Virus record (IMG/VR): IMGVR_UViG_3300010403_000705
Location: 368,845 to 432,844 of that record
Strand: one strand, 5' to 3'
DNA length: 64,000 bases
The notes beneath the pieces were generated by a model that made no database searches, was not told the DNA's origin, and worked only from the letters and a program-made list of their open reading frames with translations. Positions 4,975 to 64,000 of this stretch are shown in pieces (the first letter of the stretch is position 1; every line of letters begins with the position of its first letter). Both the position numbers and the translations under genes were made by a program.

Positions 4975-6534
4975 ATGTATGAAACTAATTTAGCTGCCGT
5001 GCGACAATCCAAGCACCAAGAATTAAATAGTGGTGCTTATCCACTTGCTTCAGAAAGTGGAATGAAGATTAATCTGATCCTTGATCAGATCAATACCACT
5101 GCCCCAGCAATTTCTTTAGATCCTAGTGAATTAGGTGATATTATTACTGCACATGGTAGAATTACAGCTATTCGTAAGTCAGGTGGTATTACTTTTATAA
5201 AGATTTTTGATTCTACCGGCTCATTACAATTAATTGCCAGTCGATCAGTTTTACTTAATTATGAACAACTTAAGCTCTTAGATTTGGGAGATATAGTTGA
5301 AATTCAAGGTAAGATGTGTCGTTCAAAGACTAGTGAACCATCTCTTTTAATTATTCAATGGTCAGTACTCACTAAGTCACATCGCCCGCCACCCGAAAAA
5401 TATTTGGGTATTTCAAATGTTGAAACTAAGTATCGAAAGAGATATTTAGATCTCATGAGTTCTGATGAGAGCCGTGCTGTATTTACTATTAGGAGTTACA
5501 TTATACGTTCTCTACGTGAGTTCATGGAACGTAATAACTTCATGGAAATGGAAACTTCTACTCTAAACACTATAAATAGTGGAGCTAATGCTTTACCATT
5601 TATTACACGACATAATTATCTAGAAATAGATCTATTTTTACGTATTGCGCCAGAACTCTATCTCAAGAGATTGTTAGTCGGTGGATACGATAAGGTTTTT
5701 GAAATAGGTAGAAATTATAGAAATGAAGGCGTATCTACACGTCATAATCCAGAGTTTACTATGATGGAATTCTATGAAACCTACGGTAGGTTTCCAGATT
5801 TGATTTCCTACACCAAGGAAATGCTACTTTATGTTGATAATTATTTAGAAAATTTAAAGGGCAATTTTGCTTATTCATACTTCCAAGAATGGAAAAATAA
5901 GAGATCCTTTACTTTATCTGCATTCAAAGTAATTACCATGTCAGAAGCTGTTAACAATGCATGCGCTAAGTTTGGCGTGACTATTGACAACCTTGGTGTG
6001 CATATTAATGACATTGATAGTCTTCAGTCAAAGAAAATTGATATTAATAGTCTATTAAATGATTTAGAATCTTGCCCTTCACAAGGCAGATTGACATCAA
6101 TATTATTCGAGTATTTTGCTGAACCATTCTTAACAGAAGATTATCGAGAAACTATTAATGGCGTCTCATATTCTGTTCCAGTATTTATTACAGAATATCC
6201 AACAGAAATTTGTCCACTTGCTAGAAAGAATGATCAAAACCCTAATGTTTGTGATAGATTTGAGTTGTTTGTAGATGGCAGGGAGTTATGCAATGCATTC
6301 CAAGAATTGAATGATCCTAATGAACAGGCTAGTAGATTTCAAGAACAACTTGAATTAAATCAAAAAGATCCTATGGGTTATGATGAAGATTACATTGAAG
6401 CATTACAATATGGTATGCCACCATCAATTGGTTTTGGTATGGGAATAGATCGTTTAGTTATGTTATTAACTAATTCTACATCTATTAAGGATGTTATTTT
6501 GTTTCCTACATTAAAAAAGGTTAATAATGTCTAA
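4975..6534 (+). CDS. lysS: Lysine--tRNA ligase, class II
   Basis: OB-fold N-terminus, YRKRYLDL, LRIAPELYLKRL, YRNEGVSTRHNPEF, GMGIDRL, VILFP. Confidence 0.95.
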   Translation: MYETNLAAVRQSKHQELNSGAYPLASESGMKINLILDQINTTAPAISLDPSELGDIITAHGRITAIRKSGGITFIKIFDSTGSLQLIASRSVLLNYEQLKLLDLGDIVEIQGKMCRSKTSEPSLLIIQWSVLTKSHRPPPEKYLGISNVETKYRKRYLDLMSSDESRAVFTIRSYIIRSLREFMERNNFMEMETSTLNTINSGANALPFITRHNYLEIDLFLRIAPELYLKRLLVGGYDKVFEIGRNYRNEGVSTRHNPEFTMMEFYETYGRFPDLISYTKEMLLYVDNYLENLKGNFAYSYFQEWKNKRSFTLSAFKVITMSEAVNNACAKFGVTIDNLGVHINDIDSLQSKKIDINSLLNDLESCPSQGRLTSILFEYFAEPFLTEDYRETINGVSYSVPVFITEYPTEICPLARKNDQNPNVCDRFELFVDGRELCNAFQELNDPNEQASRFQEQLELNQKDPMGYDEDYIEALQYGMPPSIGFGMGIDRLVMLLTNSTSIKDVILFPTLKKVNNV

Positions 6535-26155: not shown

Positions 26156-26291
26156 TAAAATGGCAAAATTATGGTTTTTAAAGTTTAAAAAAGATAATCG
26201 ATGTTAAAAAAATAACTAGGACTAAGTTATATCATTATCATTAATTATCTGTTTATCGTTGAAATTTTTGTTCAAATATAAGGAATGTATT

Positions 26292-27851
26292 ATGTCTTCA
26301 AAAAAGTTATTTTCTAATAAGTCTGTGGATGTTAAGTTAGTTAAACCAACTGATACAGTAAATAATGCTGGTGGTCAAGCCTATTCTTTAGATGATAAGG
26401 CAGCCTTGGCTCAATTAGCCATGACGGGATGTTTCAATGGTACTTATTATGTTTCTGATGAAGATCAATTAAAAAAAGTATTAGATTTAGCAAATAAATT
26501 GCCAGCAAAATATGTTGCACAACTAGCTGTTTATTCTCGTCAATATGGTTTAATGAAAGATATGCCAGCAGTTTTGGCAGCGGTAGTGGCAGGTAAGGAT
26601 TCAGATCTTTTATCAAAAATTTTTGATAAGGTAGTAGATTCCCCCAAAATGTTAAGAAATTTTGTACAAATTCTTCGTTCAGGAGTAGTAGGTCGCAAAT
26701 CTTTAGGCACTAGACCTAAGAAATTGGTTCAAAAATACCTTGAATCTTTAACTGACGAACAATTATTTATGGCTGATGTTGGAAACGACCCATCTTTACA
26801 AGATGTAATTAAATTGGTTCATCCTAAACCAACTACCAAACAACGTTCTGCTATGTTTGCATATCTCTTAAATAAAGAATATTCCCAGGATGATTTATCT
26901 TTATTAGTAAGACAATTTGAGGACTTTAAAAAGGACATGTCCAAGGACATTCCTAATGTACCTTTTCAAAAATTAACTGCTTTACCACTTACTTCTGATC
27001 ATTGGAAAAAAATTGCTTCAAATGCCACTTGGAATCAAATCAGACAAAATCTTAATACATTCGCTCGTCATAATGTCTTAAGTGATCAGGCATTATTGAA
27101 TCTTATATGTTCTAGAATAGAGGATAAGGAATTAGTTAAAAGAGCTAGAGTATTTCCTTATCAGCTTTTTACCACGTTTCAAAATTTGGAATCAAGTATA
27201 CCAACTAAGATCTCAGTTGCTTTACAAAAAGCTGCTGAACATGCATTGGAAAATATTCCAGAATTTAAAGGTAAAGTCTATGTTATGGTAGATACTTCTG
27301 GTTCTATGAGTTCGCCAGTGACTGGTAAACGTGGTACAGCTACTACAAAAATGTCTTGCATTGATGTTGCTGCTTTAGTGGCGGCAGCTATAATGAGAAA
27401 AAATTCTGATGTAGAAGTATTACCTTTTGATACTAAAGTTCATACACATAAACTGAATCCACTTGATTCGATTATGACTAATGCAAAGATTTTATCTGCT
27501 TTTGGTGGAGGAGGTACGAATTGTTCTCTTCCATTACAAGAATTGAATCGTAGAAAAGCCATGGGAGATTTAGTTATTTATGTAAGTGATAATGAATCTT
27601 GGGTTGATTCTAGCAGAGGAAAGGGGACTGCAACTATGAATGCTTGGGAAGTTTTTAAAGCTCGTAATAGAAATGCAAAATTAGTTTGTATTGATTTGAC
27701 ACCCAATACTTCTACACAAGTTTATTCTAAAAAAGACGTTCTTAACATCGGAGGTTTCTCAGATTCTGTATTTGAAGTGATAAATAAGTTCATGGAGTAC
27801 GGAAATGACGCAAATCTATGGATTAGAACAATTGAGCAGATTAAACTTTAA
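26292..27851 (+). CDS. Ro60/Rsr TROVE-vWA RNA-binding protein
   Basis: NNAGGQAY, LAQLAMTGCFNGTYY, ARVFPYQL, VDTSGSM MIDAS, GGGGTNCS, SDNESW, IGGFSD. Confidence 0.92.
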   Translation: MSSKKLFSNKSVDVKLVKPTDTVNNAGGQAYSLDDKAALAQLAMTGCFNGTYYVSDEDQLKKVLDLANKLPAKYVAQLAVYSRQYGLMKDMPAVLAAVVAGKDSDLLSKIFDKVVDSPKMLRNFVQILRSGVVGRKSLGTRPKKLVQKYLESLTDEQLFMADVGNDPSLQDVIKLVHPKPTTKQRSAMFAYLLNKEYSQDDLSLLVRQFEDFKKDMSKDIPNVPFQKLTALPLTSDHWKKIASNATWNQIRQNLNTFARHNVLSDQALLNLICSRIEDKELVKRARVFPYQLFTTFQNLESSIPTKISVALQKAAEHALENIPEFKGKVYVMVDTSGSMSSPVTGKRGTATTKMSCIDVAALVAAAIMRKNSDVEVLPFDTKVHTHKLNPLDSIMTNAKILSAFGGGGTNCSLPLQELNRRKAMGDLVIYVSDNESWVDSSRGKGTATMNAWEVFKARNRNAKLVCIDLTPNTSTQVYSKKDVLNIGGFSDSVFEVINKFMEYGNDANLWIRTIEQIKL

Positions 27852-29319: not shown

Positions 29320-30150
29320 ATGATAAAAAGAGATGGTGTTAAGTTAATGAATGCAAGAACTAATAACGTTTCTATTGCCAAAGAAACGCTGGCTATTTTG
29401 AAACAAAAATATTATAATTCTCCCAATGGTAACAAAATAAATATTTCTGAAGCATTGGATGCCGCTGTTAAAGGATCTGTTCTTTATCAAAATGAAATAA
29501 GTTTTGTTGAAAATGAGTCGGTAAAATTACCATTAATAGAAGTTACTCCTGAAACAACTGCTCAAGCAGCACAACGATTATTATGTATACATAAAGATGT
29601 AGTAGTTTTAAATTTTGCTTCTGCTAGAAATCCAGGCGGTGGATTTTTATCTGGTGCTATAGCACAAGAAGAAGATTTATGTCGCTGTTCTGGATTATAT
29701 TCTTGTCTTAAATCTAAGCCAATTTTTTATAATGAAAATATATTATGTGATAATACATATTATACAGATAATATTATTTACTCACCAAATGTTCCATTTT
29801 TTAGAAGCGAACATTTTTTATTTTTAGAAAATCCATTTTGTGTTTCTGTTATAACTGCTCCAGCACCTAATATTAGAGGTATGAATAATATCGATGAAAA
29901 ACAATTATTTGATGTATTGAGTAATAGAATATCTAAAATATTAAAAATTGCTGCATATCATAATCATAAAAATATTATTTTGGGCGCATTTGGATGTGGA
30001 GCATTTGGTAATGATCCATTAATGGTTGCACATATTTTTTTAAATTCTTTGAAAATGTTTAATTATTTTGGAAATGTATGTTTTGCTATTTATTCTAATA
30101 AAGGAGATTTAACTAATTTAAATGCATTTAAAAAAATATTTGATAAATGA
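29320..30150 (+). CDS. TIGR02452 family microbial-type PARG / macrodomain
   Basis: LNFASARNPGGGFLSGAIAQEEDLCRCS, LGAFGCGAFGNDP. Confidence 0.88.
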   Translation: MIKRDGVKLMNARTNNVSIAKETLAILKQKYYNSPNGNKINISEALDAAVKGSVLYQNEISFVENESVKLPLIEVTPETTAQAAQRLLCIHKDVVVLNFASARNPGGGFLSGAIAQEEDLCRCSGLYSCLKSKPIFYNENILCDNTYYTDNIIYSPNVPFFRSEHFLFLENPFCVSVITAPAPNIRGMNNIDEKQLFDVLSNRISKILKIAAYHNHKNIILGAFGCGAFGNDPLMVAHIFLNSLKMFNYFGNVCFAIYSNKGDLTNLNAFKKIFDK

Positions 30151-32481: not shown

Positions 32482-32558
32482 GGAGGAGTAGCTCAGTGAA
32501 AGAGCACGATGCTATAAACATAACGAGGTCCTTGGTTCAAGTCCAAGCTCTTCCACCA
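32482..32558 (+). ncRNA. tRNA-like RNA, bulged anticodon stem (nominal anticodon ATA)
   Basis: Intact acceptor, D and T arms and CCA; anticodon arm CGATG-CTATAAA-CAT-AA-CG. Confidence 0.65.
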
Positions 32559-34255: not shown

Positions 34256-34364
34256 AGCAAGAATAGTTTAATGGTAGAACGCTGGAGTCCATCCAGAAGC
34301 GGTACAAAAAGAATCCACGTGCACTGGGTAAAAAAATTCTTAGGTTCAAATCCTCCTTCTTGCT
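34256..34364 (+). ncRNA. tRNA-shell RNA with enlarged variable region
   Basis: AGCAAGAA/TTCTTGCT, D arm TAGTTTAATGGTAGAAC, CTGGA-GTCCA-TCCAG, ~45-nt insert, AGGTTCAAATCCT. Confidence 0.6.
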
Positions 34365-34669: not shown

Positions 34670-34744
34670 AGAGTAATAGTTTAATGTAAAGAATAGCCTC
34701 ATTAACAGAGGAAGATTTTGGTTTAAATCCAAATTACTCTACCA
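34670..34744 (+). ncRNA. Atypical tRNA (nominal anticodon TAA, short variable loop)
   Basis: AGAGTAA/TTACTCT-ACCA, loop ATTAACA, T-loop TTTAAAT. Confidence 0.6.
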
Positions 34745-34752
34745 CCTATAAT

Positions 34753-34838
34753 GCCGACGTTGAGCAGGTGGTGGGCTCAGTGCGCTGTAAACGCATATCC
34801 TTAAGGACTTGGAGGTTCGATTCCTCTCGGCGGCACCA
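34753..34838 (+). tRNA. tRNA-Tyr(GTA)
   Basis: Loop CTGTAAA, variable arm, CCA. Confidence 0.88.
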
Positions 34839-36227: not shown

Positions 36228-36300
36228 CAGAATATGTGGTCTAAGGGCAGGGCAGGTGGAAGTGTTCATCACGTTCAGGTTCGATTCCTGACATATTCTG
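36228..36300 (+). ncRNA. tRNA-like RNA with shrunken anticodon loop
   Basis: CAGAATATG/CATATTCTG, TCAGG-TTCGATT-CCTGA; loop of 4-6 nt; no CCA. Confidence 0.6.
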
Positions 36301-36306
36301 TTTTAT

Positions 36307-36382
36307 CGGGAAATGTTGTAATCTGGTAGCATCCGTGCTCAGGAAGCATGTAGTATGAGTTCAAATCTCGTTTTCCCGACCA
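36307..36382 (+). tRNA. tRNA-Pro(AGG), C33/A37
   Basis: CGGGAAA/TTTCCCG-ACCA, loop TCAGGAA. Confidence 0.8.
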
Positions 36383-36385
36383 TAT

Positions 36386-36494
36386 TGTAATTAAGTGTAA
36401 TGGTGCATCATCTCGATAATGATACGTACGTTCAATTCGTACACTTCCAGTCGGATATAGTAGAGAGAAAAAGGTTCGATTCCTTTAATTACAA
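36386..36494 (+). ncRNA. tRNA-shell RNA with a nested second T-arm
   Basis: TGTAATT/AATTACA, D arm, TCTC/GAGA enclosing GTACG-TTCAATT-CGTAC, outer AAAGG-TTCGATT-CCTTT. Confidence 0.65.
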
Positions 36495-36502
36495 TATACT
36501 AT

Positions 36503-36587
36503 GGATCTGTTCTCTAGCGGCAATGAGAAGAGCCTTTTAAGCTCTCGGCGAAAGCCTACGTGGGTTCGAGTCCCTCCAGATCCACCA
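36503..36587 (+). tRNA. tRNA-Lys(TTT) with long variable arm
   Basis: Loop CTTTTAA, variable stem GGC-GAAA-GCC, CCA. Confidence 0.85.
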
Positions 36588-38330: not shown

Positions 38331-38579
38331 GCGATTGTGGTGAAAGAGGAAAACACACCATCAAAAATGTTAAAAGAAGATGGCATATTAAAAATGGCAT
38401 CATAGTATTTTTTAATATAAGCTTTATAAGGTGATGCCTAGGAAAGATATATTTATAAAATATGTAACGGGTTTGCGGAAGCACCGGACAGGGTTTTGAC
38501 AAGTTCTGTAGGGAAGCGCGTTTGCCTAATAGTTATAGTGTGATGTTATATACGGGTTCAAATCCCGTCAATCGCACCA
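38331..38579 (+). ncRNA. 249-nt tRNA-shell RNA with pseudoknotted insert
   Basis: GCGATTG/CAATCGC-ACCA, D arm, ACGGG-TTCAAAT-CCCGT; ~190-nt structured insert. Confidence 0.75.
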
Positions 38580-38884: not shown

Positions 38885-38961
38885 GGGTTTGTAACTCAAT
38901 TGGAAGCAGTAGCTGGCTCTTAACCAGTGTTGTGAGAGTTCGAGTCTCTCCAGACCCACCA
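38885..38961 (+). tRNA. tRNA-Lys(CTT)
   Basis: Loop CTCTTAA, CCA. Confidence 0.9.
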
Positions 38962-47070: not shown

Positions 47071-47438
47071 ATATAGTTGGTTAAGATAATCGCTGCCAAT
47101 TTTAATTGGGAGAGGAAGTTCCGAACACCAATAAAGCAGAGTGCCAGTTAACGGCTGGGTGCAGTGATGCAACTGAAAGTGTAACAGAAAATAAACCGCC
47201 TGTAAAGGTAAGGGTGAAATGGTGAAAAATGGCGAACTAAGAGTGCGCCATGTGTAAGAGACCACCGCATATTTGGTAACAAATATGGCAATACAAACCA
47301 CACTCGGTGCAAGACAAATAGAAAACGTTTGAGAATCGCTTATTCGATGTTTTCGGGTTGTTGCTTGATCCAAATAGTGATATTTGGACTAGATTAATGA
47401 TTATCCTAGACAGAATTCGGGCTACTTATTAACTATAT
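47071..47438 (+). ncRNA. rnpB: RNase P RNA (bacterial type A-like)
   Basis: GAGGAAGTTCCG(AAC), GAAAGTGTAACAGAAA, AGGGTGAAA, GTGCAAGAC, ACAGAATTCGGGCTA; P1 ATATAGTTGGT/ATTAACTATAT. Confidence 0.92.
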
Positions 47439-47472
47439 TTCTTTTATAAAAGTTATCTAAAACATCAATACC

Positions 47473-57712: not shown

Positions 57713-59794
57713 ATGAAACCTACAAACTTGTCTATAGAAAAATTTAGAAATATTGGTATTATGGCACATATTGATGCTGGTAAAACAACAGTATCAGAGC
57801 GCATATTATTTTATAGTGGACGTATTCATTCTATGGGTGAAGTTCATAACGGTGATACTGTTATGGATGATGATCCTCTTGAAATGAAGCACGGCATCAC
57901 CATTAATTCGGCTGCCACCACTGTGTTTTGGGGCAAAGGTGGAGATATCTATCGTATTAATTTGATTGATACACCTGGTCACATTGATTTTACAGTTGAA
58001 GTTGAAAGATCATTAAGAGTGCTTGATGGTGCTGTATGTGTTCTTGACGGATCCCAAGGTGTTGAACCGCAAACAGAACAAGTATGGAGACAAGCTGATA
58101 AATATAATGTTACTCGTATAATTTTTGTTAATAAGATGGATAAAGTTGGTGCCAGTTTTCAAATGTCTTTGGATTCTTTAAAAGAAAAATTGGGCATTAA
58201 ACCTGTAGCCATTCAATTGCCGGCAGGTGAAGAAGATAAATTCAAAGGTATTTATGATCTGGTTAACATGAAATTAATTTCTTTTGATGAGAAATCTTTA
58301 GGAAGACAATATGATATTTCGGAAATTCCTCTTTCTGCTTTGGAAGAAGTCAAGGCTGCCAGGAATCAAATGATTGAGTCGTTAGCCGATGTTAGTGATT
58401 CTATTATGGAAAAATTTTTGGAGGGTAACCTGAGCGCTATTTCGATTGATGAGATTAAAATTGCTCTTCGTAAAGGTACTATCAACAGAGATTTATATCC
58501 AGTCATGTGTGGATCCGCTCTTCGTAACAAGGGAGTTCAAATGTTATTGGATGCAATAATAGATTATTTACCTTCTCCCATTGATCTGCCAGCTATAGCT
58601 GCGTTATCTAGTACAACAGGTGAAATGTTAAATTTCAAACCAGAAGCTAATGAAAAATTAGCTGCCCTATCTTTTAAGGTCGTTAATGATAAAAATGGTG
58701 ATCTTACATTCATTAGAATTTATTCTGGAACTTTAAGTGCTGGAAGTGTGGTATTTAACTCTACTCGACAACATACAGAACGTATTTCAAAATTGGTTTT
58801 GGTTCATGCTTCAAATAAGAATGAAGAAATAAAATCAGCCGGACCAGGAACTATTGTTGCGGCAGTTGGATTAAAAAATACTTTTACTGGAGACACGTTG
58901 TGTGAAAAGAAAAATCCAATTACCTTGGAGAAGATGGAATTTCCAGAACCAGTAGTAGAATTATCTGTGGAACCAAAAACTAATGCTGACCAAGATAAAT
59001 TATCAGCCGGCTTACAGAAAATGCTTTTATCAGATCCCTCATTGAAAGCGGGTACCAATATTGAAACCGGGCAAACTGTCCTAAAAGGTATGGGCGAGCT
59101 TCATTTGGAGATTGTAGTTGAACGTTTGAAAAGCGTGCATGGTGTTGATGTTAATACTGGTAAACCACAAGTTTCCTATAAAGAAACTATCACTAAGTCA
59201 AGCCAAGCAGATTATAAGTATGTTCGACAATCAGGTGGTAGAGGTCAATATGGTCATGTAGTAATTACTATTACTCCTGCTCCTAGAGGATCTGGATTGA
59301 TTTTTGTTAATGATATTGTAGGAGGAACTATTCCAAAAGAATATGTTCCTGCTGTTGAGAAAGGTATTAAAGGAGCCATGGAAAAAGGTGTATTAGCTGA
59401 TTATCCAGTCGTAGATGTAGAAGTACATCTTGTAGATGGAAGCTATCATAATGTAGACTCAAGTACCAATGCATTCGAAATTGCTGGCTCATTGGCTTTT
59501 CAACAAGCTGCAAAGGGTGCTGGAATGGTTATTTTAGAACCAATTATGGCATTAGAAATTGTAACTCCAGAACAATTTATGGGAGATGTAATTGGTACTG
59601 TTTCATCTAGAGGTGGACATATTAAAGATTCTACTATTAGAGGTAATGCTAGAGTGCTTTCAGCTCAAATGCCATTGAGAAATTTATTTGGTTATACTAC
59701 CGAGCTTCGTGGTAGAACTCAAGGCAGAGCCACACCCTCAGCAATTTTTTCTCACTATGAAGTATGTAATCTAAAATTATCTGAACTGAAATGA
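57713..59794 (+). CDS. fusA: Elongation factor G
   Basis: RNIGIMAHIDAGKTT, DTPGHIDF, NKMD, GMGELHL, QSGGRGQYGHV, SYHNVDSS. Confidence 0.95.
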   Translation: MKPTNLSIEKFRNIGIMAHIDAGKTTVSERILFYSGRIHSMGEVHNGDTVMDDDPLEMKHGITINSAATTVFWGKGGDIYRINLIDTPGHIDFTVEVERSLRVLDGAVCVLDGSQGVEPQTEQVWRQADKYNVTRIIFVNKMDKVGASFQMSLDSLKEKLGIKPVAIQLPAGEEDKFKGIYDLVNMKLISFDEKSLGRQYDISEIPLSALEEVKAARNQMIESLADVSDSIMEKFLEGNLSAISIDEIKIALRKGTINRDLYPVMCGSALRNKGVQMLLDAIIDYLPSPIDLPAIAALSSTTGEMLNFKPEANEKLAALSFKVVNDKNGDLTFIRIYSGTLSAGSVVFNSTRQHTERISKLVLVHASNKNEEIKSAGPGTIVAAVGLKNTFTGDTLCEKKNPITLEKMEFPEPVVELSVEPKTNADQDKLSAGLQKMLLSDPSLKAGTNIETGQTVLKGMGELHLEIVVERLKSVHGVDVNTGKPQVSYKETITKSSQADYKYVRQSGGRGQYGHVVITITPAPRGSGLIFVNDIVGGTIPKEYVPAVEKGIKGAMEKGVLADYPVVDVEVHLVDGSYHNVDSSTNAFEIAGSLAFQQAAKGAGMVILEPIMALEIVTPEQFMGDVIGTVSSRGGHIKDSTIRGNARVLSAQMPLRNLFGYTTELRGRTQGRATPSAIFSHYEVCNLKLSELK

Positions 59795-63194: not shown

Positions 63195-63440
63195 ATGGGA
63201 TATCATATTCGTGAAATAAAAAAAGGTAAATTCGGAGATTTTTCTAAAGTCCAAGAAGAATGGGAAGAATTATTGGATGCCTGTGAGCAGAATGCAAAAA
63301 TATTGGAATTAATTGAACTATCGGATTTATATGGAGCCATAGAAGGTTATCTTAATATTAAATATGGAATGACCATGGATGATATTAAGAAAATGTCAGA
63401 TATGACGTCATCTGCGTTTAAAGAAGGAAAAAGAAAATGA
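63195..63440 (+). CDS. MazG-like nucleotide pyrophosphohydrolase
   Basis: KVQEEWEEL...ELSDLY acidic motif. Confidence 0.6.
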   Translation: MGYHIREIKKGKFGDFSKVQEEWEELLDACEQNAKILELIELSDLYGAIEGYLNIKYGMTMDDIKKMSDMTSSAFKEGKRK

Positions 63441-64000
63441 AACCAATTAATTGGACTTGGATTGGACAAGCCGTTCAATATTATGTTGATAATGAATTTA
63501 ATTATATAGAAGCTCCTTGGATTGTACAACAATCAGCTACAGAAGTTACTTTACCACTTTTTAGGCGTGCTTTTAAAGTTAGTCATCCAGTACCAAACCT
63601 AAACCTAGGTTTTTTGGTTGGTTCAGCAGAACAAAGTTTTATTCAAATGATGATGGACGGAGATTTGTCTAAAGGTAAGTATTGCGCAGCCGGACCTTGT
63701 TTTAGAGACGAGCAAATTGCAAATGAATGGCAATTGCATTATTTTTTCAAAGTAGAATTAATAGAAGTGTCTCCGAATTCCAAAAATGTGTTTGAGGTAA
63801 TGGATTGTGCACGCCATTTTATGGAGCAGATTGGTAATTGTAATATTAGAGTAGAAAAAACAGAAGAAGGTTTTGATTTAATTTGCAAAGATATTGAATT
63901 AGGGTCTTATGGTTTTCGTACTTATGATAATTTTTCCTGGACTTATGGGACTGGTTTAGCTTTGCCAAGATTTAGTCAAATGCTAGAAGTAGTAGAATAG
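63437..64000 (+). CDS. Class II aminoacyl-tRNA synthetase catalytic-core-like protein
   Basis: GSAEQ, PCFRDE (motif 2), FFKVEL, ELGSYG, GTGLALPR (motif 3); TAG at 63998-64000. Confidence 0.7.
   Translation: MKPINWTWIGQAVQYYVDNEFNYIEAPWIVQQSATEVTLPLFRRAFKVSHPVPNLNLGFLVGSAEQSFIQMMMDGDLSKGKYCAAGPCFRDEQIANEWQLHYFFKVELIEVSPNSKNVFEVMDCARHFMEQIGNCNIRVEKTEEGFDLICKDIELGSYGFRTYDNFSWTYGTGLALPRFSQMLEVVE

What the first reader, a model, noticed from the sequence alone, without database searches (positions are those of the whole stretch)
36503..36587. tRNA-Lys(UUU) with a class II long variable arm
Seen: a TTT anticodon with a GGC-GAAA-GCC variable stem. Established: long variable arms are normally limited to Leu, Ser, Tyr and Sec. 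Inference: a dedicated substrate for the phage LysRS that resists anticodon nucleases, or a mis-acylated tRNA reading AAA.
Basis: partly seen in the sequence, partly recalled or inferred. Interest (0 to 1): 0.6.

Follow-up and report, generated by a model that had tools for sequence, protein, structure and literature searches.

The report
Phage lysine tRNA with extra arm
A giant soil phage carries a real lysine tRNA (anticodon UUU) with the extra hairpin arm normally seen only in Leu, Ser, Tyr and Sec tRNAs. The same odd shape is widespread but apparently undiscussed in phage tRNAs, including those of phiKZ, so it is a recurring phage trait rather than a one-off.

Summary
Window 36503-36587 (+) is a well-formed 85-nt tRNA with anticodon UUU, A73, an encoded CCA and a 14-nt variable region (C, GGC-GAAA-GCC, UAC).

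It is the only AAA-reading tRNA of a 433-kb soil phage in which AAA is 6.2% of codons.

It is not unique. Cultured phages carry them under plain annotation: RcXuper, XacN1, and phiKZ tRNA-Asn with the same GGC-GAAA-GCC hairpin.

The arm is selected: it folds better than shuffles, GNRA loops are common, the stem covaries, and positions 15 and 48 covary.

These tRNAs keep the acceptor and discriminator marks of the amino acid their anticodon specifies, and they occur as UUU/CUU paralogues. I therefore read this one as a genuine lysine tRNA, not a mis-decoder.

The phage does encode a class II LysRS (window 4975-6534). None of 54 other phage records carrying long-arm tRNAs (52 with tRNA-Lys, one with tRNA-Asn) has one, so a dedicated pair is not required.

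What the arm does is inferred only. My best guess is that it shields the anticodon arm from tRNA-Lys-targeting defence nucleases. I found no paper describing this.

The parts
36503..36587 (+). Whole tRNA-Lys(UUU) gene, 85 nt, class II shape, CCA encoded
   Evidence: ARAGORN; Rfam tRNA 48.8 bits; 74.4 bits on model R1, for which it was a seed sequence
36503..36509 (+). Acceptor stem 5' strand GGATCTG. It pairs with 36577-36583 (CAGATCC).
   Evidence: Sequence; ARAGORN drawing. The same acceptor stem plus A73 occurs in a long-arm tRNA-Lys(CUU) of LR756502.1.
36512..36527 (+). D arm: 3-bp stem CTC/GAG, U13.U22, loop AGCGGCAA (A14, G15, C16, G18, G19)
   Evidence: A short D stem with a non-Watson-Crick 13-22 pair is the usual core of class II tRNAs (established knowledge).
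36529..36545 (+). Anticodon arm: stem AGAGC/GCTCT, loop C32 U33 U34 U35 U36 A37 A38. Positions 39-41 are G, C, U.
36536..36538 (+). Anticodon TTT (reads AAA, and AAG by wobble)
   Evidence: This is the only UUU anticodon among the 39 tRNA genes of the 433-kb genome.
36546..36559 (+). Long variable region, 14 nt: C44, stem GGC (36547-36549) / GCC (36554-36556), GAAA tetraloop (36550-36553), three unpaired bases TAC. The final C is the candidate partner of G15.
   Evidence: Folds at -4.8 kcal/mol alone.
36560..36576 (+). T arm: stem GTGGG/CCCTC with a U.U mismatch, loop TTCGAGT
   Evidence: The same mismatched T stem recurs in other family members (L107, L024) and in two other tRNAs of this genome.
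36584..36587 (+). Discriminator A73 followed by encoded CCA
   Evidence: A73 occurs in 61 of 74 long-arm tRNA(UUU) genes.
38885..38961 (+). Ordinary class I tRNA-Lys(CUU) of the same phage. It is the closest acceptor-stem relative of the long-arm tRNA within the genome.
   Evidence: Acceptor plus N73 match at 12 of 15 positions, and T arm plus 3' acceptor at 21 of 25, the best of all tRNAs in the genome.
4975..6534 (+). Phage-encoded class II lysyl-tRNA synthetase, 519 aa: a possible but not required charging enzyme
   Evidence: NCBIfam NF001756 490.6 bits (cut-off 468) and TIGR00499 489.6 bits (cut-off 427.6). Pfam tRNA-synt_2 plus OB-fold anticodon-binding domain. Best solved relative is E. 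coli LysS, 1bbu, E = 3.5e-110.

Best explanation
It is a working lysine tRNA of the phage. It is charged with lysine through the usual marks (U34-U35-U36 and A73), by the host's LysRS, the phage's own LysRS, or both. It supplies AAA, the phage's commonest lysine codon.

Its body has the class II build: a 3-bp D stem and a 14-nt variable region with a short GNRA-capped hairpin followed by three unpaired bases. This is the layout of bacterial and phage tRNA-Tyr. It belongs to a large, phage-associated set of long-arm tRNAs whose anticodons are for Lys, Asn, Thr, Cys, Trp, Met, Gly and Ile. Each keeps the acceptor and discriminator marks of its own amino acid.

Shown here: the gene, the fold, the family, selection on the arm, retention of Lys-type marks, and independence from a phage LysRS.

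Inferred (about 0.35 on its own): the arm is kept because it changes the shape beside the anticodon stem's 3' strand and the D/elbow region. Defence nucleases that destroy tRNA-Lys(UUU) grip the tRNA there. With the arm in place, the phage copy would survive while still decoding normally.
For: Gene and fold.

Sole AAA reader, with AAA at 61.8 and AAG at 14.3 per 1000 codons in 315 long ORFs.

Family:
- Plainly annotated examples in cultured phages RcXuper, XacN1 and phiKZ.
- Three tandem copies (UUU, UUU, CUU) in LR756502.1, whose EF-G is 47% identical to this phage's.

Arm under selection:
- Variable regions fold at a mean of -2.8 against -0.57 kcal/mol for shuffles; 0 of 300 shuffle sets reach the real mean.
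- GNRA loops occur in 26 of the 67 hairpins ARAGORN called, and all Watson-Crick pair types are seen at each stem position.
- Positions 15 and 48 match as G-C or A-U in 41 of 70; 0 of 5000 shuffles reach that.
- On a model-based alignment of 150 tRNAs, 96.7% of cells are paired with covariation 0.893 against 0.199 for shuffles. Both arm pairs show double changes, but only 73.8% of arm cells pair.

Lysine identity:
- A73 in 61 of 74.
- UUU/CUU paralogue pairs on the same long-arm body.
- The co-resident class I tRNA-Lys is the strictly best acceptor-stem match in 9 of 38 cases, where chance is about 0.087 (p = 0.0045). N73 is the same in 34 of 38, and the acceptor stem is identical in L067.
- Long-arm Asn, Cys, Trp and Gly tRNAs carry G73 with U1-A72, U73, G73 and U73 respectively, as their normal counterparts do.

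No phage LysRS in 54 other phage records carrying long-arm tRNAs (52 with tRNA-Lys, one with tRNA-Asn).

Nuclease idea:
- tRNA-Lys(UUU) is the main target of PARIS AriB and of a bacterial Schlafen, both cutting the anticodon arm (PMC12409363, PMC13056530).
- AriB reads U39, A41 and U16. This tRNA has G39, U41 and C16.
- Long-arm copies keep the host-like U36-A-A-U-C in 49 of 74, against 6 of 27 neighbouring class I phage copies (p = 1e-4).
- AriB's other targets, Thr(UGU), Asn(GUU) and Thr(CGU), carry long arms in 16 of 81 genes against 36 of 559 for other class I isoacceptors (p = 2.5e-4).
Against: - No expression, charging or cleavage data exist. The only sequencing run holding this DNA is one soil DNA run.
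- The whole-molecule fold z-score is weak, at -1.35.
- The T stem and the 13-22 position carry U.U mismatches.
- The counts that bear on nucleases come from loci chosen for having a long-arm tRNA(UUU). Their sequences are related, so the p-values overstate independence.
- Cys (8 of 23) and Ile(UAU) (3 of 10) carry long arms even more often than the AriB targets, so PARIS alone cannot explain the pattern.
- This particular tRNA already differs from the AriB site in its anticodon stem, so for it the arm may be redundant.
- The host is unknown.
- Class II synthetases such as LysRS are said to approach from the variable-loop side (recalled from memory, not tested). That would make a long arm a possible hindrance to charging.
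Confidence: 0.6

Rival explanations
1. The arm is a neutral leftover. Long-arm Lys, Asn, Thr, Cys and similar tRNAs would descend from class II tRNAs (Tyr-, Ser- or Leu-like) in phage tRNA arrays. Anticodon point mutations switched them to synthetases that read the anticodon, and the acceptor end was later remodelled. The arm stays only because the class II core needs it to fold.
For: - The arm layout (1 unpaired base, 3-4 bp, 4-nt loop, 3-4 unpaired bases) matches phage tRNA-Tyr, including this phage's own tRNA-Tyr(GUA) at window 34753-34838.
- Outside the long-arm Lys group, the body is on average closest to phage tRNA-Tyr: 27.6 of 46 positions, against 29.0 for long-arm Lys.
- Most affected anticodons are one base change from a Leu, Ser or Tyr anticodon: UGU from UGA, GCA from GCU, GUU from GUA, CAU from CAA, UAU from UAA. 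This is my reading.
- In L105, the long-arm Lys and Thr genes share their D arm and variable arm.
Against: - Neutral retention does not explain the many independent lineages and the tandem paralogues kept beside normal class I copies.
- It does not explain the enrichment of GNRA caps.
- It does not explain why long-arm copies keep a host-like anticodon stem more often than class I copies do.
- An origin story and a present function are not mutually exclusive.
Confidence: 0.22
2. A private pair: the arm marks this tRNA for the phage's own LysRS, or for another phage enzyme. The phage would then keep a lysine supply independent of the host.
For: - This phage encodes a full class II LysRS 30 kb upstream.
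- It also encodes EF-G, an RNase P RNA and 39 tRNAs, so it invests heavily in its own translation.
- The variable-arm loop of long-arm tRNA-Ile(UAU) is conserved in sequence (CWGATTA). This hints that some arms are read by a protein.
Against: - 0 of 50 other viral records with long-arm tRNA(UUU) have a LysRS over the family cut-off, and 16 of those records are at least 90% complete.
- The uncultured phage LR756502.1 and the cultured phages RcXuper, XacN1 and phiKZ also lack one.
- The phage LysRS aligns along E. coli LysS with only modest insertions and no added domain.
- Arm sequences in the Lys family are not conserved; only the hairpin is.
Confidence: 0.08
3. A mis-decoder: because of its class II body, the tRNA is charged with Tyr, Leu or Ser and inserts that residue at AAA, as nematode nev-tRNAs do with leucine.
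For: - It has A73, U35 and a Tyr-like arm, which are part of the E. coli TyrRS recognition set (recalled from memory).
- There is a precedent: nev-tRNAs (PMC3333845).
Against: - AAA is 6.2% of all codons and this is the only AAA reader, so mis-insertion would hit nearly every protein.
- G73 and a long Ser-type arm are absent. The pair is G15-C48, not the A15-U48 I recall for tRNA-Leu.
- The family alternates only between the two lysine anticodons.
- Sister long-arm tRNAs carry the discriminators of their own amino acids, the opposite of the nev-tRNA pattern.
- The acceptor stems match those of co-resident normal tRNA-Lys genes.
Confidence: 0.05
4. Not a translation tRNA at all: a decaying gene copy, or a tRNA-shaped decoy that soaks up a host nuclease.
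For: - There are two U.U mismatches (13-22 and in the T stem).
- The same array holds several aberrant tRNA-like elements.
Against: - All universal tertiary positions are intact: U8, A14, G15-C48, G18, G19, and the T loop TTCGA.
- CCA is encoded.
- The same T-stem mismatch recurs in other family members.
- No other AAA reader exists in the genome.
Confidence: 0.05

Closest known systems
Bacterial tRNA-Lys(UUU), e.g. E. coli lysT/lysW
   Same: UUU anticodon in a CUUUUAA loop, A73, G1-C72 and G2-C71, 7/5 acceptor/T arrangement. Reads AAA and AAG.
   Different: The normal form has a 5-nt variable loop and a 4-bp D stem. This one has a 14-nt variable region with a hairpin and a 3-bp D stem. Positions 39-41 are G-C-U rather than U-C-A, and position 16 is C rather than U.
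Bacterial and phage tRNA-Tyr(GUA), a class II tRNA
   Same: Same arm layout: one unpaired base, a 3-bp stem, a 3-4-nt loop, three unpaired bases. Also U8-U9, a 3-bp D stem, an AGCGG-type D loop and A73 (the E. coli comparison is from memory).
   Different: The anticodon is UUU, not GUA. The acceptor stem matches the phage's tRNA-Lys(CUU), not its tRNA-Tyr.
Long-arm tRNA-Lys and tRNA-Asn genes already deposited for cultured phages: Rhodobacter phage RcXuper tRNA-Lys(ttt), Xanthomonas phage XacN1 tRNA-Lys(ctt), Pseudomonas phage phiKZ tRNA-Asn
   Same: Class I anticodon on a class II body with a short GNRA-capped arm followed by 3-4 unpaired bases. The phiKZ arm is the same GGC-GAAA-GCC.
   Different: Only distant sequence relatives, in different hosts. 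They are annotated without comment, and I found no paper discussing their shape.
Phage T5 tRNA-Lys(UUU), which escapes PARIS AriB
   Same: A phage copy of the isoacceptor most often attacked by defence nucleases. It differs from the host tRNA at positions 39, 41 and 16, as this one does (PMC12409363).
   Different: The T5 tRNA is class I and escapes through base changes. Here there is an added arm, and escape has not been tested.
Nematode nev-tRNAs (PMC3333845) and bacterial allo-tRNAs (PMC5389517)
   Same: A long variable arm combined with an anticodon that is not Leu, Ser or Tyr.
   Different: nev-tRNAs keep a leucine body and are leucylated. allo-tRNAs have 8/4 or 9/3 acceptor/T arms and serine-type arms. 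This tRNA is 7/5, has a short Tyr-type arm, and has lysine-type acceptor marks.

Membership tests
tRNA (Rfam RF00005) | Cloverleaf scoring above the curated gathering score | tested here: met
   48.8 bits against 29; ARAGORN call
Class II (long-arm) tRNA architecture | Variable region longer than about 10 nt that forms its own stem-loop | tested here: met
   14 nt, with GGC/GCC closed by GAAA, -4.8 kcal/mol
Class II (long-arm) tRNA architecture | Matching core: 3-bp D stem with a non-Watson-Crick 13-22 pair, and the last variable base pairing with base 15 | tested here: met
   CTC/GAG stem, U13.U22, G15 with C48. 15-48 covariation across the family is 41 of 70, with 0 of 5000 shuffles reaching that.
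tRNA-Lys (class II LysRS recognition set as known for E. coli: U34, U35, U36, A73) | All four recognition bases present | tested here: met
   Anticodon TTT at 36536-36538 and A at 36584. The recognition set itself is from established knowledge, not tested.
tRNA-Lys | Actually charged with lysine | not testable with these tools
   No RNA or biochemical data; only one DNA run holds the sequence
tRNA-Tyr (bacterial) | GUA anticodon | tested here: not met
   The anticodon is UUU. The phage has separate tRNA-Tyr(GUA) genes.
tRNA-Ser | G73, and a long arm (mostly 4-7 bp) with about one unpaired base on its 3' side | tested here: not met
   A73, a 3-bp stem and three unpaired 3' bases. Phage tRNA-Ser genes in the same data set have G73 in 33 of 47, one unpaired 3' base in 34 of 47, and stems of 4-7 bp in 41 of 47.
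tRNA-Leu | Leu anticodon; A73 with a Leu-type D loop and an A15-U48 pair (E. coli set, from memory) | tested here: not met
   A73 is present, but the pair is G15-C48, the D loop is AGCGG-type and the anticodon is UUU
allo-tRNA / tRNA-Sec | 8/4, 9/3 or 8/5 acceptor/T-stem arrangement | tested here: not met
   7-bp acceptor and 5-bp T stem. Rfam tRNA-Sec gave no match to it.
nev-tRNA-like mis-decoder | Body and acceptor marks of one amino acid combined with the anticodon of another | tested here: not met
   The acceptor stem is closest to the phage's tRNA-Lys(CUU). Across the family, the discriminator follows the anticodon's amino acid.
Phage long-arm tRNA-Lys group (defined here) | Matches a structure-and-sequence model built from 25 such genes, and shares their arm layout | tested here: met
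   74.4 bits on R1, though it was one of the seed sequences. Its nearest neighbours outside the anticodon and arm are other long-arm tRNA-Lys genes.

The most novel reading that the evidence does not exclude
The long variable arm on phage tRNA-Lys (and on phage tRNA-Asn, Thr, Cys, Trp, Ile(UAU) and others) is a widespread, so far unrecognised counter-defence device. It would be a bolt-on hairpin next to the anticodon stem that blocks tRNA-cutting immune nucleases such as PARIS AriB, PrrC or Schlafen-type enzymes. Charging and decoding would stay intact, so phages could keep a host-like anticodon stem.
Probability: 0.3. Interest if true: 0.8.

Novelty: new variant of a known kind. Interest (0 to 1): 0.6.

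Why it matters
Textbooks limit long variable arms to Leu, Ser, Tyr (in bacteria) and Sec tRNAs. Here that rule is broken systematically in phages, for Lys and at least seven other amino acids. The affected tRNAs include ones in well-studied phages such as phiKZ.

tRNA-Lys(UUU) is the favourite target of several bacterial immune nucleases. A structural way of escaping them would add a new route to the phage-host arms race over tRNAs.

It would also be of practical use. It shows that LysRS, AsnRS, ThrRS and others tolerate a long arm. That is relevant to tRNA engineering, where the arm can carry tags.

It is a caution for annotation too: tRNA length or class is not a safe guide to identity in phage genomes.

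Tried and rejected
- A parent gene inside the same genome. Whole-length alignment to all other tRNAs gave no close relative. Only the acceptor and T arm resemble tRNA-Lys(CUU).
- Near-identical DNA in deposited phages. There is none; megablast of 4 kb found one unrelated 78-bp tRNA match.
- Class I LysRS in the phage: none.
- Alternative genetic code. Table 11 gives 81% ORF coverage and I saw no sign that the genome uses another code, despite a tRNA(CUA) elsewhere in it. No other code was applied to any protein.
- Prokaryotic genomes. Only 14 of 120 pattern matches were real long-arm tRNA(UUU) genes. Most of these sit in dense tRNA arrays (7-31 tRNA genes per fetched locus of up to 8 kb); two loci hold only two tRNA genes. 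So this is not a normal cellular tRNA.
- The MAFFT alignment of 25 genes (A1) misplaces the arm by one column in some rows. I therefore used a covariance-model alignment instead. In that alignment only two of the three arm pairs are model positions, and 73.8% of arm cells pair.
- RNA evidence: no RNA run holds the sequence. Read laying was not used, because contigs of one DNA run cannot show expression.
- Literature: seven searches and four papers read found no description of long-arm tRNA-Lys in phages. One paper that looked relevant (PMC13219725) used 'class II' for synthetases only. Subscription journals are not covered, so absence is not proven.
- Not run: the large protein searches, structure prediction and complex prediction. 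The LysRS was settled by family scans, and the complex tool takes no RNA.

Full report
**What is there**

The window is the last 64 kb of a 432,844-bp IMG/VR virus record. The record is 97% complete by CheckV, about 31% G+C, and comes from a soil metagenome.

ARAGORN finds 24 tRNA genes in the window. In the whole genome it finds 40 genes: 39 tRNAs and one tmRNA. The gene at 36503-36587 (+) is called tRNA-Lys(ttt). Rfam's tRNA model scores it 48.8 bits against a gathering score of 29 and places the surplus bases as an insertion in the variable region. The free-energy fold gives the same four arms plus the extra hairpin.

Reading the sequence gives:
- a 7-bp acceptor stem;
- U8 and A14;
- a 3-bp D stem with U13.U22;
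- D loop AGCGGCAA;
- anticodon loop CUUUUAA;
- a 14-nt variable region: C, GGC, GAAA, GCC, UAC;
- a 5-bp T stem with one U.U mismatch;
- T loop UUCGAGU;
- A73 and an encoded CCA.

**Is it the phage's lysine tRNA?**

It is the only UUU anticodon in the genome. The other lysine tRNA is an ordinary class I tRNA-Lys(CUU) at window 38885-38961.

In 315 ORFs of at least 150 aa, AAA makes up 61.8 per 1000 codons and AAG 14.3 per 1000. A tRNA that put anything but lysine at AAA would damage almost every protein.

The four bases known to define lysine identity for class II LysRS in E. coli (U34, U35, U36, A73) are all present. That recognition set is established knowledge and was not tested here.

Among all tRNAs of the genome, tRNA-Lys(CUU) has the most similar acceptor stem (12 of 15 positions including N73). 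It also has the most similar T arm plus 3' acceptor strand (21 of 25).

**It is one of many**

I scanned IMG/VR for CTTTTAA followed 21-26 bases later by GGTTCRANTCC. That spacing is only possible with a long variable region.

ARAGORN on those loci gave 74 distinct tRNA(UUU) genes with variable regions of 10-19 nt. Most have a 3-4-bp stem and 3-4 unpaired bases on the 3' side. 61 have A73 and 44 have an encoded CCA. Many lie next to a normal class I tRNA-Lys(UUU).

The same loci hold long-arm genes with other anticodons:

| Isoacceptor | Long-arm genes / all genes |
|---|---|
| Lys(CUU) | 8 of 46 |
| Asn(GUU) | 8 of 38 |
| Thr(UGU) | 7 of 30 |
| Cys(GCA) | 8 of 23 |
| Trp(CCA) | 5 of 30 |
| Met(CAU) | 5 of 53 |
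| Gly(UCC) | 3 of 23 |
| Ile(UAU) | 3 of 10 |

This genome itself has long-arm tRNA-Arg(ACG) and tRNA-Ile(UAU) genes outside the window.

Deposited phages carry them too, annotated without remark:
- Rhodobacter phage RcXuper: tRNA-Lys(ttt), 88 nt.
- Xanthomonas phage XacN1: a long-arm tRNA-Lys(ctt) beside a 77-nt tRNA-Lys(ttt).
- Pseudomonas phage phiKZ: tRNA-Asn, 89 nt as annotated, whose arm is the same GGC-GAAA-GCC.

The 642-kb uncultured phage LR756502.1 has three long-arm lysine tRNAs in tandem. Its CUU copy shares this tRNA's acceptor stem and A73. Its EF-G is 47% identical to the one in this window.

In prokaryotic genomes the same pattern mostly hits by chance. Only 14 of 120 stretches were real long-arm tRNA(UUU) genes. 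Most of these sit in dense tRNA arrays (7-31 tRNA genes per fetched locus of up to 8 kb), and two loci hold only two tRNA genes.

**The arm is a selected structure**

- The 74 variable regions fold at a mean of -2.8 kcal/mol, against -0.57 for shuffles. 0 of 300 shuffle sets reach the real mean.
- Among the 67 hairpins ARAGORN called, GAAA (19), GCAA (4) and GUAA (3) dominate the loops.
- Every stem position shows all four Watson-Crick pair types.
- The last base of the variable region covaries with base 15: G-C 29 times and A-U 12 times, 41 of 70 in total. 0 of 5000 shuffles reach that. The arm therefore sits in a normally folded L-shape.
- On a covariance-model alignment of the 150 best matches, 96.7% of cells pair. 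The covariation score is 0.893, against 0.199 for shuffles and at most 0.129 for slid registers. Both modelled arm pairs show changes on both sides. Only 73.8% of arm cells pair, because arm lengths differ between sequences.

**Identity follows the anticodon, not the body**

Long-arm tRNAs carry the discriminators of their normal counterparts:
- Asn genes all have G73 and U1-A72.
- Cys genes all have U73.
- Trp genes all have G73.
- Gly genes all have U73.

Long-arm Lys genes occur as UUU/CUU paralogue pairs on one body, in L052, L056, L012 and LR756502.1.

Where a class I lysine tRNA lies in the same locus, it is the strictly best acceptor-stem match of the long-arm copy in 9 of 38 cases. Chance expectation is about 0.087 (binomial p = 0.0045). 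The discriminator agrees in 34 of 38. In L067 the two acceptor stems are identical while the rest of the bodies differ.

This is the opposite of nematode nev-tRNAs, which keep a leucine body under a foreign anticodon (PMC3333845).

**The phage LysRS**

Window 4975-6534 encodes a 519-aa class II LysRS. It scores above both curated cut-offs, has the OB-fold anticodon-binding domain, and aligns along E. coli LysS. There is no class I LysRS.

None of 50 other viral records with a long-arm tRNA(UUU) has a LysRS over the cut-off, and 16 of those records are at least 90% complete. LR756502.1, RcXuper, XacN1 and phiKZ also lack one.

Host LysRS must therefore normally charge these tRNAs. The pairing in this genome is a coincidence of a large translation gene set, not the reason for the arm.

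**How it most likely works**

Shown:
- It is a well-formed tRNA with lysine marks.
- It is the only AAA reader in the genome.
- It belongs to a large phage family.
- The family's arm is under selection.
- The family does not depend on a phage LysRS.

Inferred: why the arm is kept. tRNA-Lys(UUU) is the main substrate of PARIS AriB, which cuts between positions 40 and 41 and reads U39, A41 and U16. It is also the main substrate of a bacterial Schlafen that cuts the anticodon arm (PMC12409363, PMC13056530). PrrC targets it as well, from established knowledge.

The variable arm leaves the tRNA three bases after the AriB cut site, beside the D stem.

Three counts fit a shield:
- Long-arm copies keep the host-like U36-A-A-U-C in 49 of 74. 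Neighbouring class I phage copies keep it in 6 of 27 (Fisher p = 1e-4).
- AriB's other targets, Thr(UGU), Asn(GUU) and Thr(CGU), carry arms in 16 of 81 genes. Other class I isoacceptors carry them in 36 of 559 (p = 2.5e-4).
- This tRNA also has G39, U41 and C16.

These counts have limits. They come from loci chosen for a long-arm tRNA(UUU), and the sequences are related. Cys and Ile(UAU) carry arms at least as often as the AriB targets. I therefore give the shield idea about one chance in three.

The main rival is that the arm is a leftover of descent from Tyr-, Ser- or Leu-type tRNAs by anticodon change. The Tyr-like arm layout supports this, and outside the long-arm Lys group the body is on average closest to phage tRNA-Tyr. 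The two ideas can both be true.

**What is new**

I found no paper describing long-arm lysine tRNAs in phages. A 2020 review of non-canonical tRNAs does not mention phages. Subscription journals are outside the library, so this is absence in what I could search, not proof.

The gene in this window is a new variant of a known kind of gene. The wider pattern looks under-described, and it can be tested in phiKZ, RcXuper or XacN1.

**Procedural remarks**

- No other genetic code was applied.
- Read laying, the large protein searches, structure prediction and complex prediction were not used.

Noticed in passing
window 47073-47440 (+): A full-length bacterial class A RNase P RNA inside the phage genome (Rfam RF00010, 247.5 bits, model positions 1-367). 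None of the eight listed results of a paper search on jumbo or huge phages mentioned RNase P RNA.
   Followed up: partly
window 36386-36494 (+) and 34257-34364 (+): Two tRNA-like elements with good acceptor, D and T arms but about 54 extra bases where the anticodon arm should be (Rfam tRNA 31.8 and 38.7 bits). A Ro60/TROVE-vWA protein gene lies at window 26259-27851, so these could be Y-RNA/YrlA-like partners. Folding gave no clear answer.
   Followed up: partly
window 38331-38579 (+): With introns allowed, ARAGORN proposes a tRNA-Gly(gcc)-like gene interrupted by a 160-nt insert. Not checked further.
   Followed up: no
window 32482-32558, 36307-36382, 36229-36300 (+): Unusual tRNA genes in the array: tRNA-Tyr with anticodon ATA, tRNA-Pro with AGG, and a tRNA with a 6-nt anticodon loop.
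   Followed up: no
window 57713-59794 (+); 26259-27851 (+); 29320-30150 (+): The phage encodes a complete EF-G (all five domains), a Ro60-like TROVE/vWA protein and a microbial-type poly(ADP-ribose) glycohydrolase domain protein. An EF-G 47% identical is found in the 642-kb uncultured phage LR756502.1.
   Followed up: partly
G000 genome 23289-23371 and 290541-290633 (outside the window); L041, L076, L084: The same phage has long-arm tRNA-Arg(ACG) and tRNA-Ile(UAU). In four unrelated phages, the long-arm tRNA-Ile(UAU) genes share a conserved arm loop (CAGATTA or CTGATTA) on covarying stems. This suggests sequence-specific recognition of that arm.
   Followed up: partly
G000 genome 58637-58710 and 55645-55997 (outside the window): An amber-suppressor-type tRNA (anticodon CTA) and a tmRNA. 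TAG is the rarest stop (28 of 315 long ORFs), but table 11 still gives 81% ORF coverage, so recoding is not evident.
   Followed up: partly
NC_004629.1 269557-269645 (locus L245 1492-1580): The tRNA-Asn of the model jumbo phage phiKZ is class II shaped (87-89 nt) and has the same GGC-GAAA-GCC arm as this tRNA-Lys. It is annotated simply as tRNA-Asn.
   Followed up: yes
window 63437-64000 (+), runs off the end of the contig: An open-ended ORF with a weak class II synthetase core match (Pfam tRNA-synt_2, 32.7 bits; faint serS match). Its identity is unresolved.
   Followed up: no
window 34670-34741 (+): A tRNA found by Rfam (44.9 bits) but missed by ARAGORN. By my reading, its anticodon loop gives UAA on a class I body.
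   Followed up: no
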